NCBI GenBank assembly: GCA_900088475.1
Contig: FLMG01004710.1
Coordinates: 1-36,018, forward strand
DNA length: 36,018 bases
Source of the DNA: Hyphochytrium catenoides
Taxonomy: Eukaryota; Protista; Hyphochytriomycota
Reading direction: 5' to 3'
Below the pieces are notes generated by a model, which worked only from the letters and a program-made list of their open reading frames with translations, made no database searches and was not told the origin of the DNA. Position numbers and translations under genes: made by a program. Numbering within the stretch: the stretch's first letter is position 1; the number at the start of each line of letters is the position of its first letter. Positions 1,471-32,508 of the stretch are shown piece by piece.

Positions 1471-2492
1471 GAACTGTCCACCAGCTAAAGCCCTTCGTAA
1501 GCGTTCCCATCCTTTGGCTTGTAGACTCTAAGATGATGCTGAGAAGTGAAGGAAAAAGAATCTAAGCGAAACATGGAGAAGAAGGAAAAGAGGAGCAAGA
1601 CCACATTCTTTGGCTTAGCTCCCATTGCCGGAGGAAGGAAGCATCATAATGTGCTTCCTTAGAACTAACTTCCCGTCTATATAAAGGAACAAAAGAAGAA
1701 GACCTGCCTCTTTTTATGGATCTTCATCATCATTTGGAGAAGAAGAAACTTCCGCATACACACAACTTGGTAATTGTTTTCCATTATTTCACAACGATAC
1801 TTCCTTTCAAAAAAGGTTTCATTAATGTTATCACCCATTTTTAACGTAAACTTCCATACCTCCATAAATGAAAGCTTCGGTTAGGACTTTGGTGTCCGAC
1901 CGGTAACGACCAGTAACTTTCCTGAATTTCACGGACCAAGACAGAGAACGACTCGTCTGACAGCCAGAGCTTAACCCAAGATACCCAGCATATAGCGCTT
2001 TAGTATAGTAAGGCTAGTAATGCGAGCTACAATAGAGATGCGGCAGCTCGCCCTAAGAGATACAGCTTACACCTCTGTTCAGAAGCCATCCAAGGGACAA
2101 CGACAAGGCTTCAGGACCCAGAGGCGATTTCGCAAAGGAAGAGAACGATCGGGCGTGAATCTCCCAGATCAGCGCCGTCCAGACAGAGATTCTGGAGTTC
2201 TCTGTGGGTCCATCTGTAAGCCAGCAAGCCCGAGAGTGTGGGCTTTGGGCTACCGTTCACTGGATCTCATTGATTAAGAGTAGGCGGCAAGAGTGAGGGT
2301 AGAAGACGTGCCAAAAGTGGCTACATAGAGCAAGCACTGTCCTCTCATCTGCTTTCTGTCTTCGTTCTCCTGGAATACCATCTGAGCTGCCCTACCTGGC
2401 AGCTAGTAAAGCTCTGACAGAAACCTAGACCCCTAGACTTTGAGACGGAGAATTCGTGTGTCTTCTAGCAGCGATCTCTCTCACAGTTTGCC

Positions 2493-5400
2493 ATGAGCAA
2501 CGAGGAAAAAGGGCCAGACAAAGCGCGAGCTTTGAGTCAGTATGGCGGAATTTTCTCTTCCATCAAGGGACTCGATTTGGATGATAGTAAGGCTTTGATG
2601 CTGCTTGCAGAGCAGTTTCAAGCCAAGAAGGTACACTTCCATCTCTATTACTTACAACGCGCTGCCTGCATTGCTCGTAACTGTTGCTTTGCTTGTCCAG
2701 GTCTTCCGGTTCGCCTTGACGGCTGTCTCGCGTATCTTAGTTGCTCTTTCCCTATATGCCTGTACCATCGCCATGCCCTCTCCTCCGCACATTCCAGTTA
2801 ATTAGCTACATAATTTCTTACGTGCTCCAACTGGCTGTCAAACAGAGCAAAGTCCTTCGGCGTGGTCGGCACTGGCCCCACTTGTGGATCAAGGAATACT
2901 TAGTACTGGAGCAGGACGTCCTCATGACCTTTGGCTCAGAGGAGAGTCATGGCGATAGCAGAGAGCCACATATAAAAGTCCTTCTCTCCTCGTTATCGCG
3001 CGTAGTTCCTAGCAATCGGTACATCCTTACTTCCGTAGTGCATGACACTCTTTGGTTATGACCCTCAGCTCTCCTCTTCTTACAGTTGTGCTCGTCTCCT
3101 TTTGCGGATAGTTGACGGTCACTGGTCTTCTTTCTTCTGCTCTCTCTTCGACTGCCTTTGTCCTATCTTTCTCCCGCCTGTCAAGGCTCATCCTGCGTCT
3201 GCCTTCTCCCTTCCTGTTACTGCTACTCCTAATATGCGTATGCTGAATAGAGGAGCGCACACTTTTCAGCTCACAGCTGGCCTAGAGACTCTGCACATCA
3301 AATGCCCCTCTGCCTCTGAATGCTGGCTCTGGATGGAAGCGATTGCTAACAACATCAGGGTTATCCAATCCTTTGAGAAATATGCTAGAGAGAGCAGGGG
3401 AGAAGTACCCGGCGCAACGGTGATGCTGGATGACTCTCCCGCTATGAGAGATACGAAGTATGTGGGCGAAGATCTAAGAAAGGTAATCCACTATCCTTAT
3501 GACCTTTTATGGAACGTCATGGGTTCTTTCATAGTCCTGGGCTCCTTCTCCTATGAGACCATTTCGCTCTTTCGTCTCTCCGGCTGCCTCTTCATGAAGA
3601 TGGCTAGCTTCCTCCACGCAAAATCTCCCTACGTCGTCCTTGGGCTTAACTCCTCCGTTCAGGTTTATTCTTCGTCCAATACTTCATCTATGGTCATTGC
3701 TTTTCCCGTATTCTTCTTGGCGATTCGATTAAGTGAGAAGGACTTCTTCTGTATTCTCTTCTCTGCTTCTTGGGTCCTTAGCGTGGCTGGTGGCGCATCA
3801 ACCCTCCAGTGGCCACAACCATGGAGGCTGAGATTCAGAAAGGAGCGAATATTTTGGAGCAATTCCTCAACCCGGCGCTGGGACCCGAGAGAACGGTTCC
3901 AAGGAAGATCTTGCAAAATGCACAAGGTTCGACACGTTCATCCGAATGTCATGATGGAGTGAGAAAAGAGTGAGATGTGGAATGACAGTTTTACTCTTGG
4001 AGATCTCATTGTATCAAATTGAACTGAGTAGAAAAGAAGGAGCGGAACACGTTGATTGTCAGCCCAGGCGATAGCGATGCATGGAACGCATTGCATGACA
4101 AATTACGTCTCGCCCCTTGTGGTTCTCTAGGCTTGGTGCTATTGACAATTTTGAAAGCCGGCTTCATGATCGGCGGCTCCCTGGGCACTGGTCTGGTGTT
4201 AGCTCGCCTCGACAACGGCACGTGGTCTGCTCCTTCGGCTGTGGCAAGCACAAGCCTCAGCTTAGGCATACAGGTGGGCGGCTTTTTATCGCTTGCCACA
4301 GCTTTTCTCCCTCTCTCCCTATCTGTCGCTCTCTTTCTCTCCCTCTCTTCAGGACAAACGTTTCTGCCTTTCAACTTTCTCTCCCTTCTCTGGACCCTCT
4401 CCCTTTTGTCTGCCTCCTTTGTGCGGATCACTAGGCGAAAAATTTAGCTCCTCTCTCCTCTATCCTCCATTGATGGTCCTTCCATTGAACCCAACAAAGT
4501 TCACCTCTTGGCTTCCTTGCACAGGGTGGTGCAGAGATCTGCGAGTTCATGATCGTGCTTAACTCCAAGGTTGTCGGCTGGCCGTTTTCTTTGCCAAAGT
4601 TCCCTTACCTATGCAATCGCAGATCTACCTAGACCGAGTTATCGGCTCTCTTTGTGCTTCCTTCTTGGGTCTATCTTGATATTACCATTGCTCCTTCACT
4701 GAATACGCACGATTGTCACTTCGTGGCGGGTACTTCAAAGTGGGTTTTCCTCTATGCTTGTCACCGGTGAGCATCCGCCACCGATATAGCTTTCTTTCAT
4801 GAACTCAAAGCACCGCACTTATATGACGTCGATCGGATTGTTTCACTTATTGCTGCTTCAACGCTTCCTTAGTCTGCCATCAAGAATCTAACCAAGGGTG
4901 GAAGCCTTACACTCGGAGCGGGCTTGGATTTGGCAATGGGCCCTTTGGGATCTGGTACTGCAGTGGGCCTGACTGCTGGAGTGGGAGGAGTGGTACCGAA
5001 CTACGTTTATGCCCAAGGAAAGGGCCTGTACGGAGGGCTCTCTCTCCAAGGTAAGGATTATTAGTGGTTGCTCGAACCGAATAGGGAGGGATTAGGGAGG
5101 ATGTGCCGGGAGGATCAAGAAAGAGGACGGGAAAGAGACTTCGGCGGCAAGAATTTCCCTCCCTCAAATTCATCTTCTTTGGAAGGGGCCTTCTCAATTG
5201 GTGAATGACGCATTATCTCTCTATATTTTCTCTACTTTCCTCCCAGGCACTGTCATAGCGGCCCGGAATAGTATCAACGAACAGTTCTATGGGCAGCGAG
5301 TGCCTGTAGAAAAGTTGTTGGATGGAACGATGCCTCCTGCCCCGGCATGCAACCCACTTTATAGAATCATAAACGTAGCACTAGGTATCAGTGAGGAAGA

Positions 5401-8400
5401 ATTCTCTAGAAGGTGGGACGGCTAGCTCTGCCAGATTGACCTGCTTTCAGTGCTTTTCAGCGTCACGGACATGTTCGGGCTTCAATGCTCAAAGCTAGCT
5501 CTCACATGCTTGCCTTACCCTATCACTTCGCTTAATTTCCTCTTCTCGTTGGTTCACTTATCCTCTTCTCTCCCACAGCCTTCCAGTAGTCTCATGCATA
5601 TCGAAAAGATCTTCTAACTCCGACCTTTTCTTCGTCTCTCGGCAGGCTGTCGCTATCCAGCGGGCCCCCTAGAATTCCTCCTCCTACGGATATGGTCCCG
5701 CAAACCCCGCCGCTGGTGAGCGTTGCTTGCTCTATTTTTTCTCTTGCCCACTTGGGTGTGGTGATCTCTCTTACCTCAGTCAACTTTAATCCCCTCAGTC
5801 CCCTCGCTGCTGGTGATCTCTCTTACCTCAGTCAACTTTAATCCCCTCAGTCCCCTCGCTGCTGCTGCCGCTTTACTTTGCAGCGGGAAGATCGCGTTCA
5901 TATGTCCTCTGAGTAGCCTCCGTCTGCTATACCTTTCCTTCTTTGGTCCTTCTATGCTGTTTTTCCAAAGAGGTAGATTTGCGTGGTAACGTCTCATCGC
6001 TCCTAACTTTGGGGTCCATCCAGCCTTCCGACGGGATACTCGAGCAAGGAGTAACCGGAGATATCGAGCCTCCCTCGAAGCCTATGGAGCTGATCTCCAC
6101 GCAGGATTCAATCACTCTCTACTGGCGCTGGGCAGGGCGAACGCTCAATCTTGCTAACAACGAACAGGTTGGATGCTCACTGTTCGTGAATTGAAGTGCG
6201 AACTAGTACCACGCTTAGTGCTAATATGTTTGTGTTAGGTTCTGTTCATCGTGCAATGGAAGAAGGCTAACGGAAGCGAGTGGATTCATATGAGATTTCC
6301 TGTCTCCGCCACCTCTGTTAAAAAGACTATGCTTGCAGCTGGTAAGTTTAAAGAGAGGCAAAATTGCAGCCGCCTGAAGAGCAATAAAGGGAGTTCTCTT
6401 GCCAACTTGAGATAGTTGAGATGTCTAAACAGAGGTTTACGGTCTCATGAAATTAGTCTCAACGGCAAGCGGGAAGGGAAAGAGGGAAACATGGCTCTAG
6501 TTAGCCGTTGGACCATCTACACTCTAATAATGACTGTCTCCGCTCTGTCTTGCAGACACGGAGTACATGTTCCGCGTCCGGGCACAATTGGGAGACAAGG
6601 TCTCCACGTGGTCTCCTCCTAGCGACGTCATTAGGACAACATCTCCGCTGAACATGCACTGGACGGATGCAGCCTCAGCCAAATCCCCTAACCTACTTGC
6701 CGAAGGTACCGGGTGTTGCCCACCGTTAATCGTGGAGCTGCTCTAGCTTATTGCCCCTAATCCTACGTCTTGTCGCTTATCGATATTTAGCCGAGTCCAA
6801 CCCTCGCTTGCCGGGACCACCTGAGGACTTGGTGGTTAAAGATATTGGGTCCACCCAGTTCACTATTGAATGGAAGGAGCCCAGGCACAAGGGAAGGAAT
6901 TGTCTGAAGATTGACTTTTATAGAGTTCAGTGGAAGAAGATAAAGGAGCTGAAGTGGGACAGCGATATCTGTATAGAGCAAAGGTGAGCGTATCATAAGA
7001 GGCGGTGACAGGCAAGAATGACCAGAGATAGGGGTGGGAGTTAGAAGGGTGCGAAGTTTGTAGGAGACAAAAAAACTAAGTTCATCTGCCCTAAGCGTTA
7101 TAGACAGTAGCAGGTACAACGGAGGACAAAGGCCCTCAGGAGGTGGTGAGAGACTGATGAGTCAGAAAAAGCTTCCTAGGAAGATGGAAGAGAAAAGAGA
7201 AAAGATGGTATAGCAGGGAAGGCTAAGTTTAGAATTTGGAGATAAGAAAGCAGCGAGTCTTTTGGCCATCCAAGCATTGACGCATGCTCTATCTTACCAC
7301 TCCCTCTCCTCGTTCATCGCAGCTTCACTGTGTCAGAGTTGGAGCCAGGGGAGATTTACGAGGTCCTAGTTATGTGCAAGAATAAGCACGGTACGTCCAC
7401 GAGGTCAACAATTTTAATCGCCCTCCACATCCTTTAGTTCCTGCTACCATCTTTATACTGCACACGTCCCTCTCGAGCTCCCACCTCGACCTCCCCAAAA
7501 CTGATTGAAGATCAGTTGAGCTAAGGACTTCTGCTCTCTCTCTCTTTGTTCTACTCTTAGGTTGGGGCAACCCCATACGCTCAGATATCATACCTCTTAG
7601 AACAGAAGAAGGAGGAACTACTGGAGAACCCTCCGCTCCTCCTGCTTCCCTTTTAGAAGACCCCAATCAGTTCATCGACTGGCTTGACGTCGACATCAAG
7701 GATATCAAGTTCGATGATCCCAAGAAAGTGTTAGGAAAGGGTGGCTATGGCGTTGTCTATCGCACAGCAGAAAAGGGCTTCTTAGGTTTGAAATCTTCCT
7801 CTTCCTGCTTCGCAACGCCTTTAAGTCCTGACTTTTCCAGCCTTGAGTTCATATCCGTACACCTCGCTTTCCCCACCCAGCTTTGCCCATAAGAAGGGCT
7901 CAAGAGTCATGTCGCCTTCTATCCCTTGCCGACAACTTCCTTCCTTTACCTTTCCTTTAGCGATCTGTGAGTGTGCGGACCTCTCGTCTCCCTTCCTGCC
8001 GGAATTTGGCGAAGTAGCATCTATCAATAATGGTCTGGCTCTCATATAGGCAAAACGGCGGCCGTTAAGGTGCTTCACACGCAGTTACATGGGGACGCTG
8101 ATGCCATGAAGGATATGAGGACGGAAGTTGCTCTTCTCTCCTCACTTCAGCATCCCAACCTGATAGAGGTGAGTTCTCTGCCAGGGTAACTAAGAGTCCA
8201 CTGACATAGTAGACCGGTAAAGAAGTAAAGGGAGGATATCTCGTTTAAACAGCCATCAGCCACTTCCTAGTCTATCACGGTGCTCATTGATAGGATGTAC
8301 AAGCTCTGACATGAGTTCGTATGTTAGCTCTATGGCGCGCGTCTGCGTCCGGACGCTTTCTTCATAGTTACCGAATATTGCGACGCGGGTTCGCTGTACA

Positions 8401-9522
8401 GTGCTATCTATGAGGTAGATTAGATGCGATAGAGCTTCTCACACTCCAACTCTTCCTGGCCTTCCCTCTCTGCCTTTGTTAAGCAGGAATCTCGCTTGTA
8501 TGCCTGCCAAAAGCTCCTGAACCTTTTCTAGGAGCATGTCACTCCTCCATCTTCTTTAAAGTCTATATGCCACCCGAGAGCTCCCTCATTGATCTCTTTT
8601 ATTCTATCGACTGTGCTTTTTAGAAAAAGCCTCTGTTGACCTTCATGGAGAAGCTGATGGTCCTGTATGAGACAGCAGAGGCGCTGGCCTATCTTCATTC
8701 CCAGTCTCCTCCCATCATTCATAGAGATATTAAGCCTCAGGTAAGGCTTGATTTTGTTTTCTCCCTCGCCAGATGGACTTTCTCAGCTGGATTGGCTCCT
8801 CGGTCTCTCTCAGTCCGTTTGCGTTCTTAGCTGCTTGATCTCTTGCACCGTCGAGAGACTCTATCTAGTAGTAGTCACTTGGCCAGCGAGCACTCTTCCG
8901 TACTCCATATAGAAAGACTTTCTTATGACGTAACTCGTGCCCATGGTACTAGAACATCCTGCTCTCAACCATGGATCCTCCTGCCGGACCGCTACGCTAT
9001 CGCACCAAGCTAGCTGACTTTGGGTTGTCGCGGGCGAGAGAGTTTTCGTGCCTGTACACTACCGTCGGTGGAACCTATGCTTATCTCTCTCCGGAGTCAT
9101 TTAGGTAAGAAAACCGGCCCAAGAGGTAAAGGGGGGCGAGAGCTTTCTGAGGGATTGGACAGGGAGACAGTGGGTGAGGGCAAAATGATGGAAGGAGGAA
9201 GGTCCGCTGGGCATAACAGGTCTTCTGTCTTCATTGCCATTAGTTCTTTCATTAACCATAGGATTGCTCTATCTCTATCTCTGGCTTGTCTTACTCTTAT
9301 GTCGGCCTCTCCCCACTGCATTCGCGTGTCCAACAACCAAACAGAGTCAATGCGTCTATCACTGAAAAGACGGACGTATACTCGTTCGGTGTGATGATGC
9401 TGGAGACTCTTACAGCCGTCGCTCCATGGAAAAACTGCGCGCCGCATCAGATCACAATGCTCGTCGCTGTAAAGGTCAGCCATGACTCACCGCCTTATCT
9501 GTCTGTCTGATTCTGGGAGAAG

Positions 9523-9558
<36 letters not shown>

Positions 9559-9965
9559 AAACAGTTGTCCTCGAACTCGTATATCGCCACTATGCCCTCT
9601 CCCATCTCCTGGTCTCCCATCTCCTGGTGTCTTAAGTTACTTCTTCTCCCAGAGTGTTCTTGCTTGAATGTCCTGGTCAGGAGGTGCCGCCGCAATGGCT
9701 CTATCATTCTTGAGCTTCTGTCCAGTCCCTCCCGCGCCACCCTATACTCCTTTCGCCTGGGACTGGATCTATGTCTATCCCTTTCTTCTCTCATCACTTG
9801 CCTACTCTCCTCCAGAAAGAACGGCCTCCCATCTCTCCTGCCGTTCCCGAGAGGTTGGCGAAGATTATCCGTGAGTGTTGGCAGGATGACGCAAACTCTA
9901 GGCCGTCACTAGATGATGTGGCCTCTAGACTGCAGGACTTCCTAGCTGAGATCGCACTATCATAG
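2493..9965 (+). CDS. Multidomain Ser/Thr protein kinase, PH + SYLF (Ysc84/SH3YL1, DUF500) + 2x fibronectin type III + TKL-like kinase; ~975 aa, 21 exons: 2493-2630, 2846-3018, 3251-3482, 3782-3926, 4131-4273, 4525-4569, 4873-5050, 5247-5412, 5646-5715, 6024-6167, 6239-6341, 6556-6705, 6791-6983, 7323-7390, 7561-7785, 8050-8168, 8328-8414, 8624-8740, 8953-9104, 9345-9474, 9816-9965
   Basis: All introns are GT-AG with matching phases (2928 nt in total). PH: [16 protein letters not shown]...[32 protein letters not shown]: [18 protein letters not shown]...[29 protein letters not shown]...[10 protein letters not shown]...[12 protein letters not shown]3: SITLYW...TEYMFRVRA and [24 protein letters not shown]...[11 protein letters not shown]. 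Kinase: [50 protein letters not shown]. Confidence 0.88.
5759..5863. repeat. Perfect 52-bp tandem duplication in kinase intron 9
   Basis: tggtgatctctcttacctcagtcaactttaatcccctcagtcccctcgctgc occurs at 5759 and again at 5811. Confidence 0.93.
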
Positions 9966-10286
9966 CGAATCGCCCAAGCAGCAGAGAGACATAGAGCCCA
10001 CAGATGAAGAGACAGACAGAGATATAAGCAACAACGTAGCTCAGCTTCAAAGATTATAGAGCTAAGCCAGAGCATAACAACTCTGTGCTAAAGACAGGCA
10101 TACTCGTCCTTCAGCAACCATCTTGGCCTTCGCTATTGCTCTTAACGATAAATGCTTCTTTCGCTCTCTCTCCTCTCATTTGATCTCGCATGTTCTCTCT
10201 CTCTCTCTCTCTCTCTCCCTCTCTCTCTCTCTTTCTTTCTTCCTTTTTGGTTTTGGTGATAGCTCTTTCACTCTATTCTTCTGGGC

Positions 10287-10942
10287 TTAGGCTGCTCGGG
10301 TCTTGATCGTGAGGCCATGCATGTCCTTAATTTCATCCTTCAGGACCTGGCAAAGGGAAGAGAAGATGAGGTGGAGAAAGTAAGGTAGAAGAAAGAGAGA
10401 ACACATTTGCAAGAGAGAGAGAGAGAAGGCATAGAAAAGATCTGATCGTTGGACCATGAAGGGCCAATCTAAAAGAAGAGAGAAGCTCAGAGTGAATGGT
10501 AGAGTGCTTCTCAAGCCAGATGAGTGGGCGAAGGGGACATATAGCCGGTAGCACCGGACTGAGTGAGATGGATGCAGGAGCAGGCAAGAAGAGTAAATAG
10601 GCCACGTGGTCGCAGAGATAGAGAAGAGGCGTGAACGGTCAGAGAAGGAGGGACAGATGGAGAGACAGAAAGAGGCAGGAAACGAGAGTGCTAGCGCAAT
10701 TAGAGCGTTAGGATATAGAAGAGAAAGGACTTCCAGAACTGACGTCTTTGACCATCCTATGCTGATCCAATAGTCCTTTCCCTGAGAACTTCGGTGACTC
10801 CACCTCAATCTTAAACATCGCGCCACAACCGCCTGGGGCAAAAGAGACAAACAGGAGAGAGAGAGTGAGAGAGAGCGTGGAAAGAGAGAGAGAGAGCGAG
10901 AGAGAAGGAGATGGAAGCACAGAGAGAGAGAGAGACAGAGAC

Positions 10943-10973
<31 letters not shown>

Positions 10974-11287
10974 GAGAGAGGGAGAGAGCAGGAGAGAGAG
11001 AGAGAGAGAGAGAAAGAGACCGTAAAGCACACTCGAAGAACTAAGCTGAGGACGATCGAGCGCTAGGAAAGAGAAGAAAAGTTGGGAAGGAGCCGACAAG
11101 GTGATCAATGTGGACCTGAGATATCAGCCACAGAAACTCTAGTTGCTTCTAACTTCGTTTGCAGCAGATCTTTCAGCTCTGCCTCGCGTTCTGAGAGCTC
11201 TGTGCTAAAGAATCGAGAAAGAGGGGTCCGAGCCTGACCCTTGAAGCCTCTGATGCTATGGGAGAGAGCTCGAGAGAGAGGATTCAT
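10287..11287 (-). CDS. BOLA3: BolA-family protein, BolA3/Aim1-type, probably mitochondrial; 106 aa; exons 11287-11116, 10832-10744, 10346-10287
   Basis: Spliced product MNPLSRALSHSIRGFKGQARTPLSRFFSTELSEREAELKDLLQTKLEATRVSVADISGGCGAMFKIEVESPKFSGKGLLDQHRMVKDVLKDEIKDMHGLTIKTRAA has the DISGGCG, F.G...L.QHRMV and HGL motifs, plus an Arg/Ser-rich, acid-free N-terminus like a presequence. Confidence 0.93.
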
Positions 11288-12188
11288 CTTGACAAAGAGC
11301 AAAGACCTATCTTTTCCCGGTGACGAGAAGATACTACCGAGACGACAGAAGTCGGTAACACTAGTCCTTAGGAGCAGCTGCCGGTTCTCTCGGGCTCTGC
11401 ACGTCTGACTAACTGAGAGAGAGGCAGGAAGGAAGGAAAGGAGAGAATCTGAGCTCTGAGAAGCCTGGGGATCAAGAGAGAAAAGAGGAGAAAATTGTCT
11501 CTTTGGAGGTGCGTTCGTGTTCTCCCTTCACCATCAGAATCAGGACATCTCTGTACTTTTGTGAAAAAAGCTGTAAAGTGTACGTCAATTATGAGGTTTG
11601 ACGTTATTTGACGTTGACATTGCCTTCGCTTCCAGAGGCGCTCTGAGTGTGAATTAAGACATTCTTCACCGTTATTGACAAGGATTTGTGAAAAAAGATT
11701 CGCAGCTTTTTTGAAGAGCTTGAAATGGGGTTCTGAAGGGGGGGGAGAGAGAGAGACAGAGACAGAGGGAGAGAGAGAGAGAGAGAGNNNNNNNNNNNNN
11801 NNNNNNNNNNNNNNNNNNNNNNNNNNNNNNNNGAGAGAGAGAGAGAGAGAGTTGTTGAGGCAGATAGATGAAGGGTCAAAAGGATCGATGCCTTCCTCTA
11901 TCTCCCGTGTAGGCCTGCACTACGCTGGCTTGGTCTCTGTCGCTCTTGACACGCTTCCTCCTGTCAGCAGCCATTTCCTGATCTCTCAATCAGTCTGTGG
12001 GGCTTCTCTCGATAGAGGAGATCTCTCTCTTTCTTCGTCGAAGTAGGAAAGCACTAAGGAGAAACACATCTAGTGTCCCAAGGCCGAGGAAGACGGGAAG
12101 AAGAAGAAGATTTCTGGATAGGAGGCAAGCCCAGTCCAGAAGAGAAGCGGACGGCGGGCGAGCGCTGACTTGGACGCCAGAGAGGAGA
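11288..12188. promoter_or_regulatory. Probable divergent promoter region between BolA and the helicase
   Basis: Head-to-head start codons about 0.9 kb apart (includes a gap). An AT-richer core near 11550-11730 is flanked by GA tracts. Inferred from gene layout only. Confidence 0.4.
11788..11832. other. Assembly gap within a (GA)n microsatellite
   Basis: Run of N flanked by GA repeats. Confidence 0.97.
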
Positions 12189-12556
12189 ATGGCTCCAGGA
12201 GGGCGCAATCGTAGGGGCAGAGGAGGCCGACAAGAGGCCAGGGGAAGGGCCAACCGACAGAAGCCTCCGCCAAAGGGTGCACCTCCTCCTCCGGTGGGCT
12301 GCTATCCTTCTTGCTTCTCCCTGTGTCGTCTCTTGCTTGTCTCTTGTTTGTTATCTTCTTCCTCCTGCGCCTTGCGGACGATTGCATTTTGCAAGCTTAG
12401 CAGGCCACCTTCCCCTCCCTTTCTCTCTCCCTGTTCTCTTTCTATCCTCTACGTCTTTCTCTTTCTGGCCCTCTGTGTTCTCTGTCCTCCCCTGCTCTAG
12501 CTCTCTCACATTCTCTGCTCTCTCGTCCTCTTCCCCTCCTCTCTCATTCTCTGCTC

Positions 12557-12613
<57 letters not shown>

Positions 12614-13681
12614 TTTTTTTCTCCCTCTCTTTTTGTCTTTCTCTTGCCCTATTAAGCAAGAAGTCGCGTCTCCTCTCTCTCCTATATGTTTCCATTAGCC
12701 TTGACACACGTTGTATGCAACACTTTTTCTGTCTGCAGCAATACATTGTGCCCGAGTCTTTCCAGATTGAGACCACAAAGATGCTGATGTCCATCAGAGA
12801 AGAAGGATTGCAAGGTCAGCTTCGTTTTTCCTCTCTCCTTCTAGCCGCTGTCCTCGCGTCGATGGCCTTCACGTCTCTTAGGTTTGAGCTCTTTACTCAT
12901 TCTCCCCCGTGCTTCCTTGCACTCGTACTTCTTATGGGCTCCAGCCGTCAGTGCACGTGTCTCTCCTTCTCTTCGCGCGCATGTCTTCTAGAAATAAGTC
13001 TTCTCAATGACCCTGTTTTCTCTCTTTTTCGAGTGCTCACTAACATTGCACTGGGCCAATCTCTGTCTCTTTCTTTCATTCTTCTCCCTCCCTCTTTCTC
13101 TCTCTCTGTGTCTCTCTCTCTCTCCGTCAATACTCTTTGGTTTTATGTCTCCTCCTGTATCTGATATATTGGTCTAGCTGTAAGCTTTCCGCCGACTTTG
13201 GACAGCACTCAACGGCGGTTCATACACTCAATGTGCACCAGACTAGGACTTCATTCCAAGAGTCAAGGGTAAGAAGGGATCTACATGCATTTGTCCCTCC
13301 TCTCTCTCCTTCTTTTTCTCTCTCTCCCTCTTTACTATCTCTCCCCTCTCTCTTTCTCTCTCTCTCGCGCGCGCGCCCCCAGACTCTCTCTCCCCCAGGC
13401 TCTCTCTCTATCACTCTCTCTCTCTCTCTTCCCTGCTCTTTCTATCTTTTGCTTTGCTAATTCACGCGACTCTGTCCGCTCGGCGCAATTGTAACGTTCG
13501 AATCTTTACGCGACATCCTCCTTCTGCTCACCACTCAACGCCACCTTCCTACTACCACACTTCTACTCTACCCTTTATCTCTTTTTCGATGCTGTGGATC
13601 TAACCTGTTCCCGTCTTCCTTCTTTCCTCACCTCTTCTCTTTACCTGGTTTCCCCTTTTTCTCTCTCCTCTCACTCTTTCT

Positions 13682-23791: not shown

Positions 23792-24333
23792 GAAAGAGGG
23801 CAAAAAGAGAACGACTGACGGTTCTATTAGAGTAGTGGTGGTGATCTTGATGATCGAGGCAAAGAGAGACGCACTGAAGGGGGAAGGATGAAGAGAGAGA
23901 GAGAAAGAGAGAACAGAAATGAGCAAGGCGGTGGAGATTATGCTTAAGGAACAGCTGAAAAGTGGGAAAGCGCTCTCTCTTGTTCTCTCCTTTGACGCCA
24001 ATCCTCTTCCCTGCTCGCTAACCGCGCCAGCAGAACGACGTGGCGATTGAACGACTTTGTCTAAGATTCTTATACACCGGCAGCGGGAAATCAAAAAAAG
24101 AGAGAAAGAGAGAGAGAGAGGGAGAGAGAGGCAGAGAGAGAGGGAGAGAGAGGCAGAGAGAGAGAGAGAGAGAGAGAGAGTTTCACCCTCAGAATCTCTT
24201 CAGGTTACGAAAGGTTTTTTCCTCTCTTTTGAAGGAAGTTCTACAGGATCTATGCTCTCTCCCTCTCCCGGGTCTGTATGTGTATGTCTTCTGCACCTTT
24301 AGCCGATGTCTCCCCTCTACTTTCTCTCTCTCT

Positions 24334-24380
<47 letters not shown>

Positions 24381-24540
24381 CTGCAGTGTTCTCTGGTGGA
24401 GACACTGCCTGGCTTGGCCAACGCCTCTCTCCGGCTCTCTTGCTACAGAACTGAAGCAGACAGAGCGGATGCTCTTCCTTTGGCGCCATGACCATCACTG
24501 AACGGCGTGCTGACTCCTGACCTTCTGCCCGCACTCCGGC

Positions 24541-24547
24541 TCTCTTA

Positions 24548-24591
<44 letters not shown>

Positions 24592-24718
24592 CTCTCTCAT
24601 TCTCTCTCTCTCTCTCTCTCCTTTCAATCTCTCTTCCTCTGTATTTCCATCTCTCTTACCCCTTGCCTCTTAGGGTTTCTTCCGCCTCCCTCTCTCTCTC
24701 TCTCATTTTCTCTCTCTT

Positions 24719-24762
<44 letters not shown>

Positions 24763-24900
24763 TCTTTCTCCCTCTCTGTCTCACTCTCTCTCTCCCTCTC
24801 TCTCTGTCTGTCTCTCTCTCTCTCTCCCTCTCACTCCCTCTCACACTCTCTCTCTGTTCCTCTTAACCTTCCCTCTTTTCCTTAGTTTCGGCTCTCTGTC
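24541..24900. repeat. Long compound (CT)n microsatellite including a 12-bp (ctctctctcttt)n array
   Basis: Nearly pure pyrimidine tract; the ctctctctcttt unit repeats about 5 times near 24710-24770. Confidence 0.9.
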
Positions 24901-26516
24901 TCTCTTGTCCAATTTTGCGTCTTTATTTCCTTCATGTGAAAAGCGCAACTAACCTTCTTCAAAAGGCTAAGATCCAAGTATTTACCCACTTGAAGGATTC
25001 AGGAAACCTTGAGGGACTGAAGGTTTCGGAACAAAGGATGAAACTGCCTATTCCCCGCCTCTCACAAGATACCAAACTGTGGGAAAGTGAGAGAAGACAC
25101 TTGGATTCACAAACAGAGAGAGCAAGAGATAGCAACCAACCGATAGAACTCTGACTAAAGGCCCTGATTGTGATGAAGGAGGTAAGACAGAGAGAGACGA
25201 AGATGTATTACAAGCAAATAAGAGGTAGAACGACGAACCCGTAAAATAAACAAACGAGAGAAATTGAAGCAGAGAAACTCAGAAAGAGTGAAGGGAACCT
25301 CCCGAATAGCAAGCCAAACTATAGCATAGAAGCAGTACAGGTAGAAACGACCGAACAAAAACTAATGGCGAGGAAAAGAACAACCCGAAATTGGAGAGTA
25401 GATGGTTCTCACAGACCATCTTATTCAGGTTTACCATAGAATTTTACAGAGAGACTAGGAGTGCGAGGATGAGGGAGAGAAAGAATGACTGGATATTTGG
25501 ACCAGGCAAATGCAGGTAGGACATACAATAGGGTGAGCTTTATCTAGAGAGTGACCTTTGGGTCCAAACGTTATGGATGTGGAGAATGCCTTCTGGCCGA
25601 AAGTAAGAGCCAGCATTTTATATATGGAGTTGTTTCTGCAAAACTAGTGCATATTAGGTATATTTGGTTAACCTTATTTCTGTAGAAGCCAATAATAAGA
25701 GATGAGGGCGACAGAGCTTGCTTACAAAGCTTGTTCTCGTTCTCTTTGTGTTATTCAGAGTAGCCACATCTATTTTGAGTACTAGAGATGTTCTATTTTG
25801 CGCTATTCTCGCTAAACACGTTACCACACATTGCTAAGAGCGTTTCAGGCATTCAGAGCGTCGTACCCAAGATGCAATGAATGTGAGAAGCTGAGGGCAG
25901 AAGTGATGGGCGCCGCCATCTTTTTAACACTGGCATGCTGCTCTTTTGGCATCCTGGCTTGCCTACACTGATCGTCAAAAGGGTTACTGAAAGCAAGTAC
26001 GTTGATTAAGTCTCTAGTCTTCCCTGAGTTTTGAATCAAAAAGAGACTTGACCTTTGTGATAACTAAACAGACATTGTGAGATTATCCTTTTCATTCAGT
26101 TATCGCTCTTACCATATTCTAGTTCTATGAGGACCTTCCTTTGTCGTATTCTTTGTCTCTTATATACAACTGACCGAAAGGAATCTCCATTATACCAAGG
26201 ACCTAGCAATAAAGTAATGGTTTGCTCCTAATTTGCCGCAGGATAGTCCCGTAATAGTCGCAGCCAATGGTTCTTGTCCTCAAACTCTTTTGCCATAGAT
26301 TCTCTATATCTGGGAGCTCCCACTTCGGAGCTCCATCAGAATCCGTTTCTAGGCTGTGCTGTTGAGGGCGAACCATTTGCAGCTTCCTTATTTCATCCTT
26401 CCCCCATAGCCAGGAGGAAGAGGAAGAAGTGTACAAAGGGCTGGTATAGAGATTAAGGCAAAGGCTGGGACCGTTCCTCTTACAATCCATATACGTTTGG
26501 GTAGATAACCAACAAG

Positions 26517-27211: not shown

Positions 27212-28587
27212 CTCCCTCCCGCGCGCGCAAGCCTTCTGTCACAGCGCTCTCACTCTTACTCTCTGTGTTCTGTTTTCACCTCTATCGTTCCTTTCTCGTC
27301 CTTTCTCTCTCTCTCACCGCGTTTCTCTCTTCCATTTCCTCCTTGTCTTCTCCTTAGGACTTTGACGTTTGCAAGACCAAGCTTATAGAGCGAGGAGAGA
27401 AGTTCGCCTCTGCGTCCTTGAAAAGTAGACAGAAGATTGCCGAAGTGAGCCATAACTTTGTACGAGACGGGATGACGGTGCTCACTCATGGATACTCGAG
27501 GGTGGTCATAGCCATCCTTCTCCGGGCAGGGAAAAATAGGCACTTCTCCGTGGTCGTGACAGAAAGTAGACCCGATCAGTCCGGGTTAGTATTGACCCTT
27601 AAAAGTTTGTCCCTCTCTCTCTCTCTCCCTACTCTTTTCTTCTTCTTCTCCCTTTTTTTGCTTTATTTCTTTGTCCAGCTTACTTTCTTCCTTCTGTTGC
27701 TCGGTCGACTGCACTGTTTTGCCATCTATCGCTGGTATCCATCCTTGCTCCAAAGAGGCAAATGTAGCCAGCACACTAGAGAGATAGTCCTTTGCCCGTC
27801 CTCTTTCATTGGGCCTTTGTTCCGCTTATGCCCTACCTCGTTTCCAACTGAATCGTGACGGCCTTCGCAGCACAAAGACGGCGAAGATCTTAGCGCAAGC
27901 CGGTATTCCCGTCACAGTCATCCTAGATAGCGCTGTGGCTCATATTATGGAAAAGGTAGGGCATCTCTGTAAATGTGTTCCTTCTCATTGCAATTACTTG
28001 GCTGGCCTAGCAGCTTCTCCGGTCATTATTTGCTCAATTGCCACCCGCCGTGAGATAGATGGTACATCGGACTAACGACCTAGTCAATGGATGTAGGTTG
28101 ACCTTGTAGTCGTTGGAGCCGAGGGCATTGTGGAGAACGGAGGAGTAGTGAACAAGGTGCATTACGTTCATAAGTCTCTTATGCTTGCTCTTCATTGAGT
28201 TTCTCTTCCTTTATGACACATCTTCCTAAGTCAGGAGATGGCTAGCGCCTCCTCAGCCTCTTTCGTCGCTCTAGGTGACGCTTCTACCCTTCATTCTGTC
28301 CTTTGAGTTGCATGTCCTCCTGCTTATAGAAAACGTTCTCTCCTCCTTGTTTTTCCTTGCTCCAGATCGGCACGTTCCAGTCTGCAATCGCGGCAAAGGC
28401 GTTCAATAAGCCTGTGTATGTGGCTGCAGAGAGCTACAAGTTTGCTCGGTTCTATCCTCTGAACCAAAGTGACATCCCCACTATTATTGCTCAAAGGAAA
28501 GCAGCCTACGACGAGCAGCTAAAGAAGGAATTCAAAGACTTGTCCCATGTAACGGTAAGACAGCACCACGTCAAGGCAAGAAGAGCC

Positions 28588-29487: not shown

Positions 29488-29522
<35 letters not shown>

Positions 29523-29691
29523 GGAGACTGGATAGCAAAAAGAAGAGGAGAAAGAGAATTGTAGCAAGGCGAGAAGAGAGGAGCTGATTGTGAGAAGGCA
29601 AGAGAAACAGGAGGAGCAGACTCCAGCAAACGAAGCCTCAAGGTCAGAACGACGCAGTCTCTCCATAGGAAGTCTCTCTCTCGGATCTTGC

Positions 29692-29914
29692 ATGAAGCGC
29701 GTTGCTGCGGCAGCTATGGACTATGAAGAGAAGGAGAGAGATGACGAGGAGGAGGAGGAAGGGAAGAGAAGGAATGAGTCAGTAGGAGAGAGAGGAGAGG
29801 GAGAGAGAGGAGTGGAAGAGAGAGAAGGAGAAGAGGATGCGCCACCAGAAAGGCTCCGAAGAGCGGAAACTATCCTCCAAAATAGGATTGGTCTGTACCA
29901 GCAAAATATGTCAA

Positions 29915-29971
<57 letters not shown>

Positions 29972-30823
29972 GTCCCTCGCTCTCTCTCTCTGTCTCTCGC
30001 TCTCGCTCTCTTACCCGGTCTCCATTCTCTCGCTGTTTCTTCTCTATCTTACGTTCCCCTCTGCCTCTCCCCCACCTTCTCTATCACACACACACACACA
30101 CACACACACTATCTCTATCTGTATGTGCCTCTTCTCCCTGTATGGCTGTCTCTCCCCTTTCCCTCGCCCGTATCTTCTTTCTCTCTTCTCATCCTTTGTC
30201 TATCGCCATCTCTCTGACTCTCTCTTTTCTGCTTCTGTCTCCCTCTGGGACGGACCGGATCGCTCTTCCCTCCTCTGCGCTCCTTCAGTGTCAAACGCTT
30301 TGGGACCCTGCCGTATCTCTCTCCTATCAATATCTTATCCCCCCCTCTCTCTCTCTCTCTCTTCCCTCCTCCCGCCTTCTTCTTCTTCTTCTTCTTCTCC
30401 CTCTCTCTCTCTCTTTCTTTCTCTCTCCCAAGCCCGCACTCTCTTTGGTTTTTTTTCTCTCACTCTGCCGCTCCTGCCCTTCCCTCAGGCAGTATCCTGC
30501 TGGTGCTCGAGCAGTGCATAGACTCTAGGAACCAACAAGCAGTCCTTCGAACTGCAGAAGGTGAGAGAAGAAAGGAGACAAAAAGAAAGAGGGAGAGAGA
30601 CAGAGACAGAGAGAGAGCGAAGGAGGGCGGAGAGAGAGAGAGAGAGAAAAGAGGACAGAGAGAGAGAGAGAGAGAAAGAAAAAGAAGAGAGAAAAGGACA
30701 GATAGAGAGAGAAGAGTACGTGGGGATATGCATGGTGTTGTGTGCGCGAGAGTTACAGATACGAATCTCCCTCCTCACGCTCAAGTTCTGTCCCCATCAC
30801 TTCTCTCTCTCCTCCTCTCTCCT

Positions 30824-30865
<42 letters not shown>

Positions 30866-32508
30866 TTATTTTTCAAAGCCATGGGTCTCCAGCATGTCTG
30901 GGTGATTGACTCGTCCTTTGTTAAGAACGGAGATAAGATCGCGAAGAGGATAACTAAGAATTGCACCATGTGGCTCTCTCTCCGACACTTTTCAAGCACT
31001 GCTGAGTGCATCGCTGCCATCAGAGAGGAGAAGAGAGAGATCTGGGTAACGGATCTCTCTCCAGAGGCCCAAAGGATGACCCTCAACGGTAGGCTCTCTC
31101 TCTCTCTCTTGCTGTTGTTTCTTTCCCTCACTTTCTCTCTTCTTCTCCCTCGCTTGCCCTAGTCCGCGCGCGTCACCGCTCTTTTGCTGCTACCACCATG
31201 CTCTCTCGCTCCTCTTGTCGTCTCTCCTTCTTGTTCGTATCTTTCTCTCTCTCCCTCCAGTGCGCAGCATGCCATCTCTCTCCGTATGGCTGCTTCTCTT
31301 ACTCTCTCCTTTCTTCTCTCACTTGTAGCCCTTGCCTCTCCCTTTCTCTCTCAACGTTCAACAGTGCTTTGGCTCCTCAACGCTTGATAGCCTTCTCTTT
31401 CGTTCTTGGCACCCTTCCGCTCTTTCGATCTACGTCTAAATCTCTCTCTCTCTCTCTCACTCTCTCTCTCTCTCTGTGCCTCTCTCTCTCTCTCTGTCGC
31501 TTTTACTCTCACTTCTTCTTCTCTCTCTTTTTCTCTCGCTCTTGCCCCCTTCCTCGTACCTCCAAGGCAAGCCTTCTCGCTCCCTCCCTCGCATCGCGCT
31601 GGTAATCGGGAGAGAAGCGGACGGAGTCTCTCCTGAGATGATTGCTGCATCTTCTCTCCGTCTATATCTCCCTCTCTTCGGGTTCACAGAGAGTCTGAAT
31701 CTCTCCGTGGCGACGGCGCTGGTTCTGCAGAGACTCTTGGATTGGTTTCCTGAGGCGAGAGGAGACTTAGAGGAGAGAGAAAAGGAGGAGATTAGAAGAG
31801 AGTGGTAGGTAGGGCTTCGGTCTCTGACGCAGGAAAAGGGAGAAAAGGATGAGGAGAGACAGTAGACGGATCAACGAAAAGAAAGCGACAATGAAAGAGA
31901 GAGAGAGAGAAAAGAGAGAGAGAGAGAGAGAACAGAGACGCAACCTCAGAGGGTCGAAAAGGAGCGGGCCAAAAATTCCAGGGCTTTTTCTTCCGGACTT
32001 TTCTCTTTTTTTATATCCTCATCTTGCTTTATGTGCTCTCTCTCTCTCTCTCTCTTTCCTCATCTTGCTTTATGTGCTCTCTCTCTCTCTCTTTCCTCTT
32101 CTCCCTTGTTTTTCTCTCACTCTCTCATTCAACCCCTCTCACTTCTCTCTTCTCTTCGTCTCTTATCCCCTCAAAATCTATCTCTCTGCCTCTCCTGCTC
32201 ACTCTCTCTCTCTCTCTCTCTCTCTCCTTCTCTCTCCCCTTCTCTCATGTCACTATGGTGTTTGTAGGTTCTCCCAGCTCTTCCAGAATCCTACCAGCCA
32301 ACTGAAGCACTCGAAGTGGCAGAAGAGAGCCATTCCGTTGCTCAATGACCTGAGAAGAGAGAAGGATGTCCCACGTGTGCCGCCGAAGATCAGGAAGAGA
32401 AGAGAAATAGAGGTAAAACAAACGATGAAAGAGAGAGATGCGCCTCTTCTTCATTTGGGACTTATCGGAAGAAGAGTGAGAAGGAACGAGAGAGGTGTCT
32501 GCATCTGA
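29692..32508 (+). CDS. SpoU/TrmH-family RNA 2'-O-methyltransferase (SPOUT), TrmH-like; ~319 aa; exons 29692-29890, 30489-30560, 30879-31088, 31567-31804, 32268-32508
   Basis: Motif 1 LLVLEQCIDSRNQQAVLRTAEAMG, motif 2 ALVIGREADGVS, motif 3 LPLFGFTESLNLSVATALVL; N-terminal helix ERLRRAETILQNR. The start (29692 or 29717) and the extreme C-terminus are less certain. Confidence 0.9.
32016..32098. repeat. ~41-bp tandem duplication in the last intron of the methyltransferase
   Basis: tcctcatcttgctttatgtg(ct)n ttt occurs at 32016 and 32057. Confidence 0.85.

What the first reader, a model, noticed from the sequence alone, without database searches (positions are those of the whole stretch)
2493..9965. 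PH-SYLF-FN3-FN3-kinase: an apparently undescribed lipid-sensing kinase architecture
Seen: one continuous 21-exon frame links a PH domain, a complete SYLF domain, a Pro-rich linker, two FN3 domains and a catalytically intact kinase (AVK, HRDIKPQN, DFG, SPE), with no signal peptide or transmembrane segment. Established: SYLF domains (Ysc84/Lsb3, SH3YL1) bind phosphoinositides and actin and are usually paired with SH3 or FYVE domains; PH domains bind phosphoinositides. Inference: a cytosolic kinase recruited by two lipid-binding modules to endocytic or actin-remodelling membranes. I do not know of a characterised SYLF-kinase fusion.
Basis: partly seen in the sequence, partly recalled or inferred. 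Interest (0 to 1): 0.85.

Follow-up and report, generated by a model that had tools for sequence, protein, structure and literature searches.

The report
Lipid-binding SYLF module fused to kinase
An intron-rich protist gene most likely encodes one 975-residue cytosolic protein that joins two membrane-lipid-binding modules (PH-like and SYLF) through two fibronectin-type domains to an intact signalling kinase, a combination I could not find elsewhere, but RNA proof that it is a single transcript is still missing.

Summary
I rebuilt it independently: the same junctions, all introns GT-AG, 2928 coding bases, 975 residues, no internal stop.

Domain support:
- SYLF: firm. Pfam matches above threshold, and a 215-residue collinear alignment to SYLF proteins across five exons.
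- Second FN3: firm.
- Kinase: firm and complete, TKL-like, with all catalytic motifs present.
- PH domain and first FN3: probable only.

No signal peptide or membrane segment was found. Strain differences show purifying selection in the chosen frames: 12 of 14 exonic changes are synonymous and all 12 listed indels are intronic.

RNA confirms only one junction (exon 19/20). The key SYLF-to-FN3 link (exons 8-9-10) has no transcript support. A two-gene reading stays possible, because a stop lies four codons past the exon 8 donor. Branch-point motifs, intron-like composition and lack of intergenic room favour one gene (about 0.75).

No SYLF-kinase fusion appeared among 43 SYLF relatives, the best 120 of 1217 SYLF proteins, or 80 metagenomic SYLF loci. 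No paper searched describes one. An InterPro-type architecture query could not be run.

Verdict: a plausible new domain arrangement of a known kind, of moderate interest. The scan had not noted it before on other DNA.

The parts
2493..9965 (+). Whole predicted gene: 21 exons, 975-residue product. Exons: 2493-2630, 2846-3018, 3251-3482, 3782-3926, 4131-4273, 4525-4569, 4873-5050, 5247-5412, 5646-5715, 6024-6167, 6239-6341, 6556-6705, 6791-6983, 7323-7390, 7561-7785, 8050-8168, 8328-8414, 8624-8740, 8953-9104, 9345-9474, 9816-9965.
   Evidence: all introns GT-AG, phases consistent, one terminal stop; 12 of 14 exonic strain differences are synonymous; all 12 listed indels fall in predicted introns.
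2846..3359 (+). Probable PH domain (about residues 47-140), split over exons 2-3. It has a basic stretch at its start and the conserved Trp in the C-terminal helix.
   Evidence: Pfam PH E 0.029, 15.3 bits, profile positions 67-104, below the cut-off; most Atlas feature neighbours are PH clusters (score 0.87, a lead); no PDB sequence match.
3797..5398 (+). Complete SYLF (Ysc84/DUF500) domain, residues 187-402, over exons 4-8, including a 15-codon micro-exon (4525-4569).
   Evidence: Ysc84 hits above the cut-off on exons 7 and 8; collinear 208-218-residue alignments, 40-42% identity, E 1e-50 to 1e-56, to FYVE-SYLF, PX-SYLF and oomycete SYLF proteins; exon pieces align in register from the N-terminal helix to the C-terminal end.
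5413..5645 (+). Intron 8, the critical link. Donor AAG|GTGGGA. An in-frame stop lies at 5423-5425 if the intron is retained. The acceptor at 5645 has CTAAC 29 bases upstream and an 83% pyrimidine tract.
   Evidence: Two frame-shifting indels between strains lie at 5456 and 5476.
5646..5715 (+). Exon 9: a 70-base Pro-rich linker exon (residues 407-430). It contains the ATG at 5692 that a separate downstream gene would have to use.
   Evidence: The one strain difference (5655) is at a third codon position and synonymous.
5716..6023 (+). Intron 9, with CTAAC 18 bases before the acceptor and a perfect 52-base tandem duplication (5759-5864).
   Evidence: Contigs of runs X1 and X2 appear to carry one copy (loose end at 5812).
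6069..6641 (+). Probable first FN3 domain (about residues 446-541), exons 10-12.
   Evidence: fn3 E 0.1 on exon 12, profile positions 60-83. Atlas neighbours of exon 10 are fn3 clusters (0.84, a lead). The strand-B Trp and a Tyr-x-Phe-x-Val-x-Ala strand-F pattern are read directly.
6802..7601 (+). Second FN3 domain (about residues 567-663), exons 13-15. Its last strand shares exon 15 with the start of the kinase.
   Evidence: fn3 27.1 bits, E 4.9e-6, on exon 13. Exon 15 reading.
7710..9947 (+). Protein kinase domain (about residues 700-970), exons 15-21, TKL-like, with all catalytic motifs intact.
   Evidence: collinear Pfam Pkinase / PK_Tyr_Ser-Thr pieces; the best solved-structure matches of exon 20 are CTR1, MLKL, Pto, RIPK1, DLK and IRAK4; 245-residue collinear alignment to a metagenomic kinase; an RNA contig skips exactly intron 19 (240 bases).

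Best explanation
One gene encodes a soluble 975-residue Ser/Thr (TKL-type) kinase. Its N-terminal half is a PH-like domain followed by a full SYLF domain. This head is joined by a Pro-rich linker and two FN3 domains to the catalytic domain.

Proposed mechanism (inferred): the PH-SYLF head binds acidic phosphoinositides, and possibly F-actin, at endocytic, endosomal or actin-remodelling membranes. This concentrates the kinase there. The FN3 pair acts as a rigid spacer or a docking surface. In effect, the effector-recruiting SH3 of Ysc84/SH3YL1 is replaced by a built-in enzyme.

Shown: the exon chain, the domain content, intact catalytic residues, purifying selection, and transcription and splicing of the kinase end.

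Inferred: a single transcript across exons 8-10, lipid binding, localisation and substrates.
For: - Gene model: the consistent 21-exon GT-AG model is.
- SYLF: the domain is collinear across five exons.
- Kinase: the domain is collinear across six exons, and the motifs are intact.
- FN3-kinase join: FN3-2 and the kinase start share exon 15, so that join needs no splicing.
- Selection: 12 of 14 exonic differences are synonymous and all listed indels are intronic.
- Branch points: the acceptors at 5645 and 6023 are the only AGs in 5426-6085 with a CTAAC branch-point motif. Only 0.065% of AGs in the window combine CTAAC with at least 70% pyrimidines. So exon 9 looks like an internal exon that needs an upstream partner, and exon 8 is 233 bases away.
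- Composition: introns 8 and 9 are 65-66% pyrimidine, like most introns here, while the flanks are 35-52%.
- Reading frame: the in-frame part of exon 10 upstream of its only Met has no ATG, yet it carries the start of FN3-1.
- Spacing: only 266 bases separate the alternative stop (5425) from the ATG at 5692, whereas more than 2 kb on either side of the gene shows no coding.
- Relatives: SYLF relatives pair SYLF with FYVE or PX lipid binders.
- Precedent: SYLF lipid binding is documented for SH3YL1 (PMC3105542).
Against: - No RNA covers exons 1-18.
- An in-frame TAG lies four codons after the exon 8 donor. Reading through would give a PH-SYLF protein of about 411 residues, whose layout resembles the common lipid-binder-plus-SYLF proteins in which SYLF lies near the C terminus.
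- Several other in-frame GT-AG paths between exons 8 and 10 exist, so an open path alone proves little.
- No relative with this architecture was found.
- The PH and FN3-1 calls are below Pfam thresholds.
- The near-invariant Arg of the SYLF GPxGR motif is Ser319 here.
Confidence: 0.6

Rival explanations
1. Two adjacent same-strand genes were chained by the reader. The first is a PH-SYLF gene of about 411 residues ending at the TAG at 5423-5425. The second is an FN3-FN3-kinase gene of about 550 residues starting at the ATG at 5692 (or using another 5' exon).
For: A stop lies four codons past the exon 8 donor. The ATG at 5692 has purine at -3 and G at +4. Relatives often end shortly after SYLF. 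No homologue with the fused layout was found. No RNA crosses this region.
Against: Only about 175-266 bases are available for a 3' UTR, an intergenic promoter and a 5' UTR. Upstream ATGs at 5471, 5485, 5506 and 5594 would burden such a leader. The acceptor at 5645 has a textbook CTAAC branch point plus a pyrimidine tract, which implies that exon 9 is internal. The interval has intron-like composition.
Confidence: 0.22
2. It is a single gene, but the PH-SYLF head is mainly a regulatory or actin-binding module, for example auto-inhibitory or F-actin bundling as in yeast Ysc84, rather than a phosphoinositide-targeting device.
For: Yeast SYLF domains bind F-actin whereas human SH3YL1 does not (PMC3105542). 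Here the basic pair in the N-terminal helix is Gln-Lys rather than Lys-Lys or Arg-Lys, and the GPxGR Arg is Ser. The PH signal is weak.
Against: The stretch at the start of the PH-like domain is strongly basic. The closest SYLF relatives all carry dedicated PI3P binders (FYVE, PX), which suggests a membrane context.
Confidence: 0.12
3. It is a decaying or non-functional locus, with exon-like remnants that are not expressed as protein.
For: RNA coverage is very low: one 232-base contig at depth 2.4.
Against: There is no frame break in 2928 coding bases. 12 of 14 exonic differences are synonymous and indels are confined to introns. The RNA contig is correctly spliced.
Confidence: 0.03

Closest known systems
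SH3YL1 / yeast Ysc84-Lsb3 (SYLF-SH3 adaptors)
   Same: Both have a full-length SYLF domain of about 215 residues, including the N-terminal helix region, and both are cytosolic. In both, SYLF is coupled to a C-terminal effector module.
   Different: There is no SH3 domain. The effector is a built-in kinase reached through two FN3 domains. A PH-like domain precedes SYLF. The Arg of the GPxGR motif is Ser.
FYVE-SYLF proteins (plant CFS1; oomycete FYVE-SYLF-PAH) and diatom PX-SYLF proteins
   Same: These are the closest SYLF sequences found (40-50% identity). They share the logic of a dedicated phosphoinositide binder placed N-terminal to SYLF.
   Different: The partner here is PH-like rather than FYVE or PX. 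None of the relatives examined carries FN3 or a kinase.
PH-domain protein kinases (Akt/PKB, PDK1; Phytophthora PITG_12903 as listed in PMC3019232)
   Same: Both work on the principle of a soluble kinase recruited by a lipid-binding domain.
   Different: The kinase here is TKL-like, not AGC. It has a second lipid-binding module (SYLF) and an FN3 pair. The canonical phosphoinositide-binding signature of the PH domain was not tested.
Expanded TKL kinases of oomycetes and related stramenopiles with unusual accessory domains
   Same: The kinase C-lobe is closest to the TKL members CTR1, MLKL, RIPK1 and IRAK4. The genome is reported in earlier notes to hold many kinase fusions. The SYLF part is nearest to oomycete proteins.
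   Different: The Phytophthora infestans kinome paper mentions neither fibronectin/FN3 nor Ysc84/DUF500 anywhere in its main text.
Kinases with FN3 domains (receptor tyrosine kinases; titin/twitchin-type cytoskeletal kinases)
   Same: FN3 modules sit directly N-terminal to a kinase.
   Different: There is no signal peptide or membrane segment, so the FN3 pair is cytosolic. The kinase is not of tyrosine-kinase or CAMK type by its nearest matches.

Membership tests
SYLF / Ysc84 domain (PF04366) | Pfam match above the gathering score | tested here: met
   exon 7 scores 36.2 bits and exon 8 scores 33.1 bits against a cut-off of 25.1, covering profile positions 25-82 and 83-125.
SYLF / Ysc84 domain (PF04366) | Full domain of about 220 residues, collinear with known members, including the N-terminal extension | tested here: met
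   model residues 187-402 align end to end with 14 SYLF proteins.
SYLF / Ysc84 domain (PF04366) | Basic amphipathic N-terminal helix needed for lipid binding in SH3YL1 (PMC3105542) | tested here: inconclusive
   the helix region is present and aligned. At the Lys-Lys/Arg-Lys position of relatives it reads Gln-Lys, and basic residues lie just upstream.
SYLF / Ysc84 domain (PF04366) | Near-invariant Arg in the GPxGR motif | tested here: not met
   this protein has Gly-Pro-Leu-Gly-Ser (Ser319). One fungal relative (P0032) shares this. The significance is unknown.
PH domain (PF00169) | Pfam match above the gathering score | tested here: inconclusive
   15.3 bits against 25.1, on exon 3 only. The domain is split over exons and could not be submitted whole. 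Atlas neighbours are PH clusters. There was no PDB sequence match.
Fibronectin type III (PF00041), second copy | Pfam match above the gathering score | tested here: met
   exon 13 scores 27.1 bits against 25, covering profile positions 2-41.
Fibronectin type III (PF00041), first copy | Pfam match above the gathering score | tested here: inconclusive
   13.3 bits on exon 12. Atlas neighbours of exon 10 are fn3 clusters; only weak similarity to the second copy.
Eukaryotic protein kinase, active | Gly loop, VAIK Lys, alpha-C Glu, HRD...N, DFG, APE-like motif and subdomain XI Arg all present | tested here: met
   read directly as G708-G713, K731, E750, H826-N833, D854-G856, S878-E880 and R955.
TKL group | Closest to TKL kinases in a kinase-wide comparison or phylogeny | tested here: inconclusive
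   exon 20 is best matched by CTR1, MLKL, Pto, RIPK1, DLK and IRAK4. C-lobe pieces score better with PK_Tyr_Ser-Thr; exon 19 gives mixed CAMK/ULK/IRAK hits. No phylogeny was run.
SH3YL1/Ysc84-type adaptor | C-terminal SH3 domain | tested here: not met
   no SH3 match on any exon piece. The C terminus is the kinase.
FYVE-SYLF (CFS1-type) | FYVE zinc finger N-terminal to SYLF | tested here: not met
   no FYVE match. The N-terminal region has no Cys-rich finger.
Receptor kinase with an extracellular FN3 domain | Signal peptide, and a transmembrane helix between FN3 and the kinase | tested here: not met
   no hydrophobic N terminus. The only window above 1.6 lies in the conserved SYLF core. The FN3-kinase linker is acidic and polar.

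The most novel reading that the evidence does not exclude
This is the first kinase with a built-in SYLF domain. It would be a single polypeptide that reads membrane phosphoinositide state, and possibly actin, through a PH-SYLF tandem and answers directly by phosphorylation. It would have arisen in one stramenopile lineage by fusion of a PH-SYLF gene of the lipid-binder-plus-SYLF type with an FN3-TKL kinase gene.
Probability: 0.55. Interest if true: 0.5.

Novelty: new variant of a known kind. Interest (0 to 1): 0.42.

Why it matters
SYLF proteins link phosphoinositides and actin to endocytosis, membrane ruffling and autophagosome sorting. All studied examples act as adaptors that recruit other enzymes. 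A SYLF domain wired directly to an active kinase would give a compact, testable case of lipid-gated phosphorylation. It would also add to the evidence that stramenopile protists diversify signalling by attaching unusual sensor modules to TKL kinases.

The significance is moderate for three reasons. It is a new arrangement of familiar domains. It sits in a genome said to hold many kinase fusions. Its key junction is unproven.

Tried and rejected
- RNA evidence: the search for RNA runs over the whole gene listed none. A second search found one RNA run with 5% of the words. Laying it gave a single 232-base contig over exons 19-20 only. Both tools were then at their caps.
- Own or orthologous protein: exon 7 against 1.84 billion representatives gave no hit above 50% identity and no kinase-bearing hit. 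The genome's proteins are therefore apparently not in the collection.
- Long SYLF proteins: a search with P0003's SYLF region returned only 7 hits. A SYLF profile search returned 1217 hits, of which only 120 could be inspected, none with a kinase.
- Metagenome scans: exon 15 found nothing. A SYLF profile gave 80 loci, and only L021 had a kinase, as a separate gene 7 kb away with genes on the opposite strand between.
- Solved-structure sequence search: the PH exons gave nothing.
- Atlas search with exon 15: only kinase fragments.
- Literature: no paper joins SYLF or Ysc84 with a kinase. The Phytophthora and Saprolegnia kinome texts and the Hyphochytrium supplements mention no FN3 or Ysc84 kinase.
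- Not done: whole-protein Pfam scan, structure prediction and full-length homology search. The spliced protein has no reference and I did not type it in.
- Open reading path: I considered treating the open path between exons 8 and 10 as evidence and rejected that, because many alternative in-frame paths exist.
Full report
**The sequence**

The window is eukaryotic and intron-rich. It has about 49% G+C and many (CT)n tracts.

I translated 2400-10100 in three frames, enumerated frame-compatible GT-AG pairs, and read the DNA itself. This gave a 21-exon model on the + strand from the ATG at 2493 to the TAG ending at 9965.

- All 20 introns are GT-AG and 71-341 bases long.
- Phases are consistent throughout.
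- The coding sequence is 2928 bases and encodes 975 residues without an internal stop.

**Domain content**

The spliced protein has no reference, so I did not type it in. I tested exon pieces by reference instead.

- **SYLF.** Pfam gives Ysc84 on exon 7 (36.2 bits) and exon 8 (33.1 bits), both above the 25.1 cut-off. The alignments are 40-42% identical over 208-218 residues, with E values of 1e-50 to 1e-56. A multiple alignment places exons 4, 5, 7 and 8 in register from the N-terminal helix to the C-terminal end. This validates junctions 4 to 8, including a 15-codon micro-exon.
- **Second FN3.** Pfam gives fn3 on exon 13 at 27.1 bits against a cut-off of 25.
- **Kinase.** Kinase profiles match exons 16-21 in strict order, at profile positions 26-62, 66-92, 98-128, 128-168, 173-216 and 221-258. 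The kinase part aligns collinearly over 245 residues to an unrelated metagenomic kinase.
- **PH domain.** This is only probable. Pfam gives E 0.029 on exon 3. Language-model neighbours are nearly all PH clusters. There was no solved-structure sequence match.
- **First FN3.** This is also only probable. Pfam gives E 0.1 on exon 12, and exon 10's neighbours are fn3 clusters.

The catalytic motifs are all present: G708-G713, K731, E750, HRDIKPQN at 826-833, DFG at 854-856, SPE at 878-880 and R955. The C-lobe is closest to the TKL kinases CTR1, MLKL, Pto, RIPK1, DLK and IRAK4.

Hydropathy shows no signal peptide or membrane helix. The only window above 1.6 is the conserved SYLF core strand.

**Expression and selection**

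Two DNA runs of the same species label cover the region and differ from the window by about 1-1.5%.

- Of the 40 differences listed, 14 are exonic and 12 of those are synonymous in my frames. They fall in exons 3, 7, 9, 10, 15 and 16.
- All 12 listed indels lie in predicted introns, although exons make up 39% of the stretch.

One RNA-library contig of 232 bases lies on 8998-9101 and continues exactly at 9342. It skips 240 bases, which equals the length of intron 19. The simplest reading is canonical splicing at 9104|9345 plus a synonymous T-to-C change at 9102.

The locus is therefore a maintained, transcribed coding gene, at least at its kinase end.

**One gene or two?**

The FN3-to-kinase join lies inside exon 15 and needs no splicing. 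The PH-to-SYLF join (3482|3782) and the SYLF-to-FN3 join (5412|5646 and 5715|6024) rest on prediction.

Points in favour of two genes:
- The exon 8 donor is followed four codons later by a TAG. Read-through would give a PH-SYLF protein of about 411 residues.
- The nearest SYLF relatives are FYVE-SYLF, PX-SYLF or SYLF-only proteins, and many end soon after SYLF.
- Exon 9 holds an ATG (5692) that could start a downstream FN3-FN3-kinase gene.
- Many alternative in-frame GT-AG paths exist between exons 8 and 10, so an open path alone is not evidence.

Points in favour of one gene:
- The acceptors at 5645 and 6023 are the only AGs between 5426 and 6085 preceded by a CTAAC branch-point motif, at 29 and 18 bases.
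- The 5645 acceptor also has an 83% pyrimidine tract. Only 0.065% of all AGs in the window combine these two features.
- Exon 9 therefore looks like an internal exon that needs an upstream partner, and exon 8 is 233 bases away.
- Both intervals are 65-66% pyrimidine, like most introns of this gene, while the flanks are 35-52%.
- A separate downstream gene would have to fit the upstream gene's 3' end, a promoter and a leader free of the ATGs at 5471-5594 into under 270 bases. In contrast, more than 2 kb on each side of the locus shows no coding.
- The beginning of FN3-1 lies upstream of the only Met in exon 10, in a frame with no ATG.

I put a single transcript at about 0.75. No RNA was available to settle it.

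**Novelty**

- Exon 7 searched against 1.84 billion representative proteins found 36 relatives, the best at 50% identity. The top ones are oomycete proteins.
- None of the 43 SYLF relatives scanned has a kinase, FN3 or PH domain. Their partners are FYVE, PX, SH3 and a PAH domain.
- A SYLF profile search returned 1217 proteins. The best 120 have no kinase.
- Of 80 metagenomic SYLF loci with flanks, only one had a kinase nearby, as a separate gene.
- Papers on SYLF, on the Phytophthora and Saprolegnia kinomes and on the Hyphochytrium genome mention no such fusion.
- These searches are incomplete. I could not run a domain-architecture query, nor search with the FN3-kinase half at full length.

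**Organism**

Earlier notes of this scan call the genome an intron-rich stramenopile. My own hits agree, since the nearest SYLF sequences are oomycete. The intron size here (mean about 220 bases) resembles the 208 bases reported for Hyphochytrium catenoides (PMC5795050). I did not confirm the species.

**Mechanism and verdict**

The best reading is a soluble TKL kinase targeted by a PH-SYLF head to phosphoinositide-rich, perhaps actin-associated, membranes. The FN3 pair would act as a spacer or docking module. It works like a lipid-recruited kinase such as Akt, and like SYLF adaptors in which the SH3 effector arm has been replaced by an enzyme.

Lipid binding is inferred from SH3YL1 (PMC3105542). 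Two SYLF features differ here: Ser319 replaces the near-invariant Arg of GPxGR, and the helix has Gln-Lys at the basic pair.

This is a new variant of a known kind, of moderate interest. The decisive experiment is cDNA across 5412-6024.

Noticed in passing
window 5759-5864: A perfect 52-base tandem duplication (2.0 copies, 100% identity) lies inside intron 9. Contigs of DNA runs X1 and X2 have a loose end at 5812 that continues with the sequence after the second copy. Those strains probably carry one copy, making this a copy-number polymorphism.
   Followed up: partly
window 4939-4953 (residues 315-319): The near-invariant Arg of the SYLF Gly-Pro-x-Gly-Arg motif is Ser here (Gly-Pro-Leu-Gly-Ser). 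Among the relatives aligned, only a Halteromyces protein (P0032) shares this. The functional meaning is unknown.
   Followed up: partly
window 2465-2493: A pyrimidine tract ending in CAG at 2485 sits 7 bases before the start ATG. It could be the acceptor of a 5' UTR intron or of an unseen upstream exon, so the N terminus may be longer than modelled.
   Followed up: no
window 5413-5645: Intron 8 holds a second, very strong acceptor-like site at 5578 (89% pyrimidine) that is out of frame. Intron retention gives a stop after four codons. Either event would yield a PH-SYLF-only protein, a possible short isoform.
   Followed up: no
window 3240-9239: DNA runs X1 and X2 (same species label) differ from the window and from each other by about 1-1.5%. 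There are also many contigs at 90-95% likeness, which suggests divergent strains or haplotypes, or repeat-derived matches.
   Followed up: partly
window 10100-13000, 24000-25000, 29500-32500 and elsewhere: (CT)n/(GA)n microsatellites are extremely abundant, giving long artificial Ser-Leu or Arg-Glu open frames. Several runs of N mark assembly gaps (for example near 11.78 kb, 23.7 kb, 29.2 kb and 35.3 kb).
   Followed up: no
L021 9779-10921 and 17274-19763: A metagenomic contig carries a 380-residue SYLF gene and an 829-residue protein kinase gene on the same strand 7 kb apart, with three opposite-strand genes between them. They are neighbours, not a fusion.
   Followed up: partly
window 27418-27600 and 31560-31808: The + strand shows exon-like pieces that resemble an eIF2B-type subunit and a SpoU-type RNA methyltransferase. 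These are ordinary housekeeping neighbours, judged by eye only.
   Followed up: no
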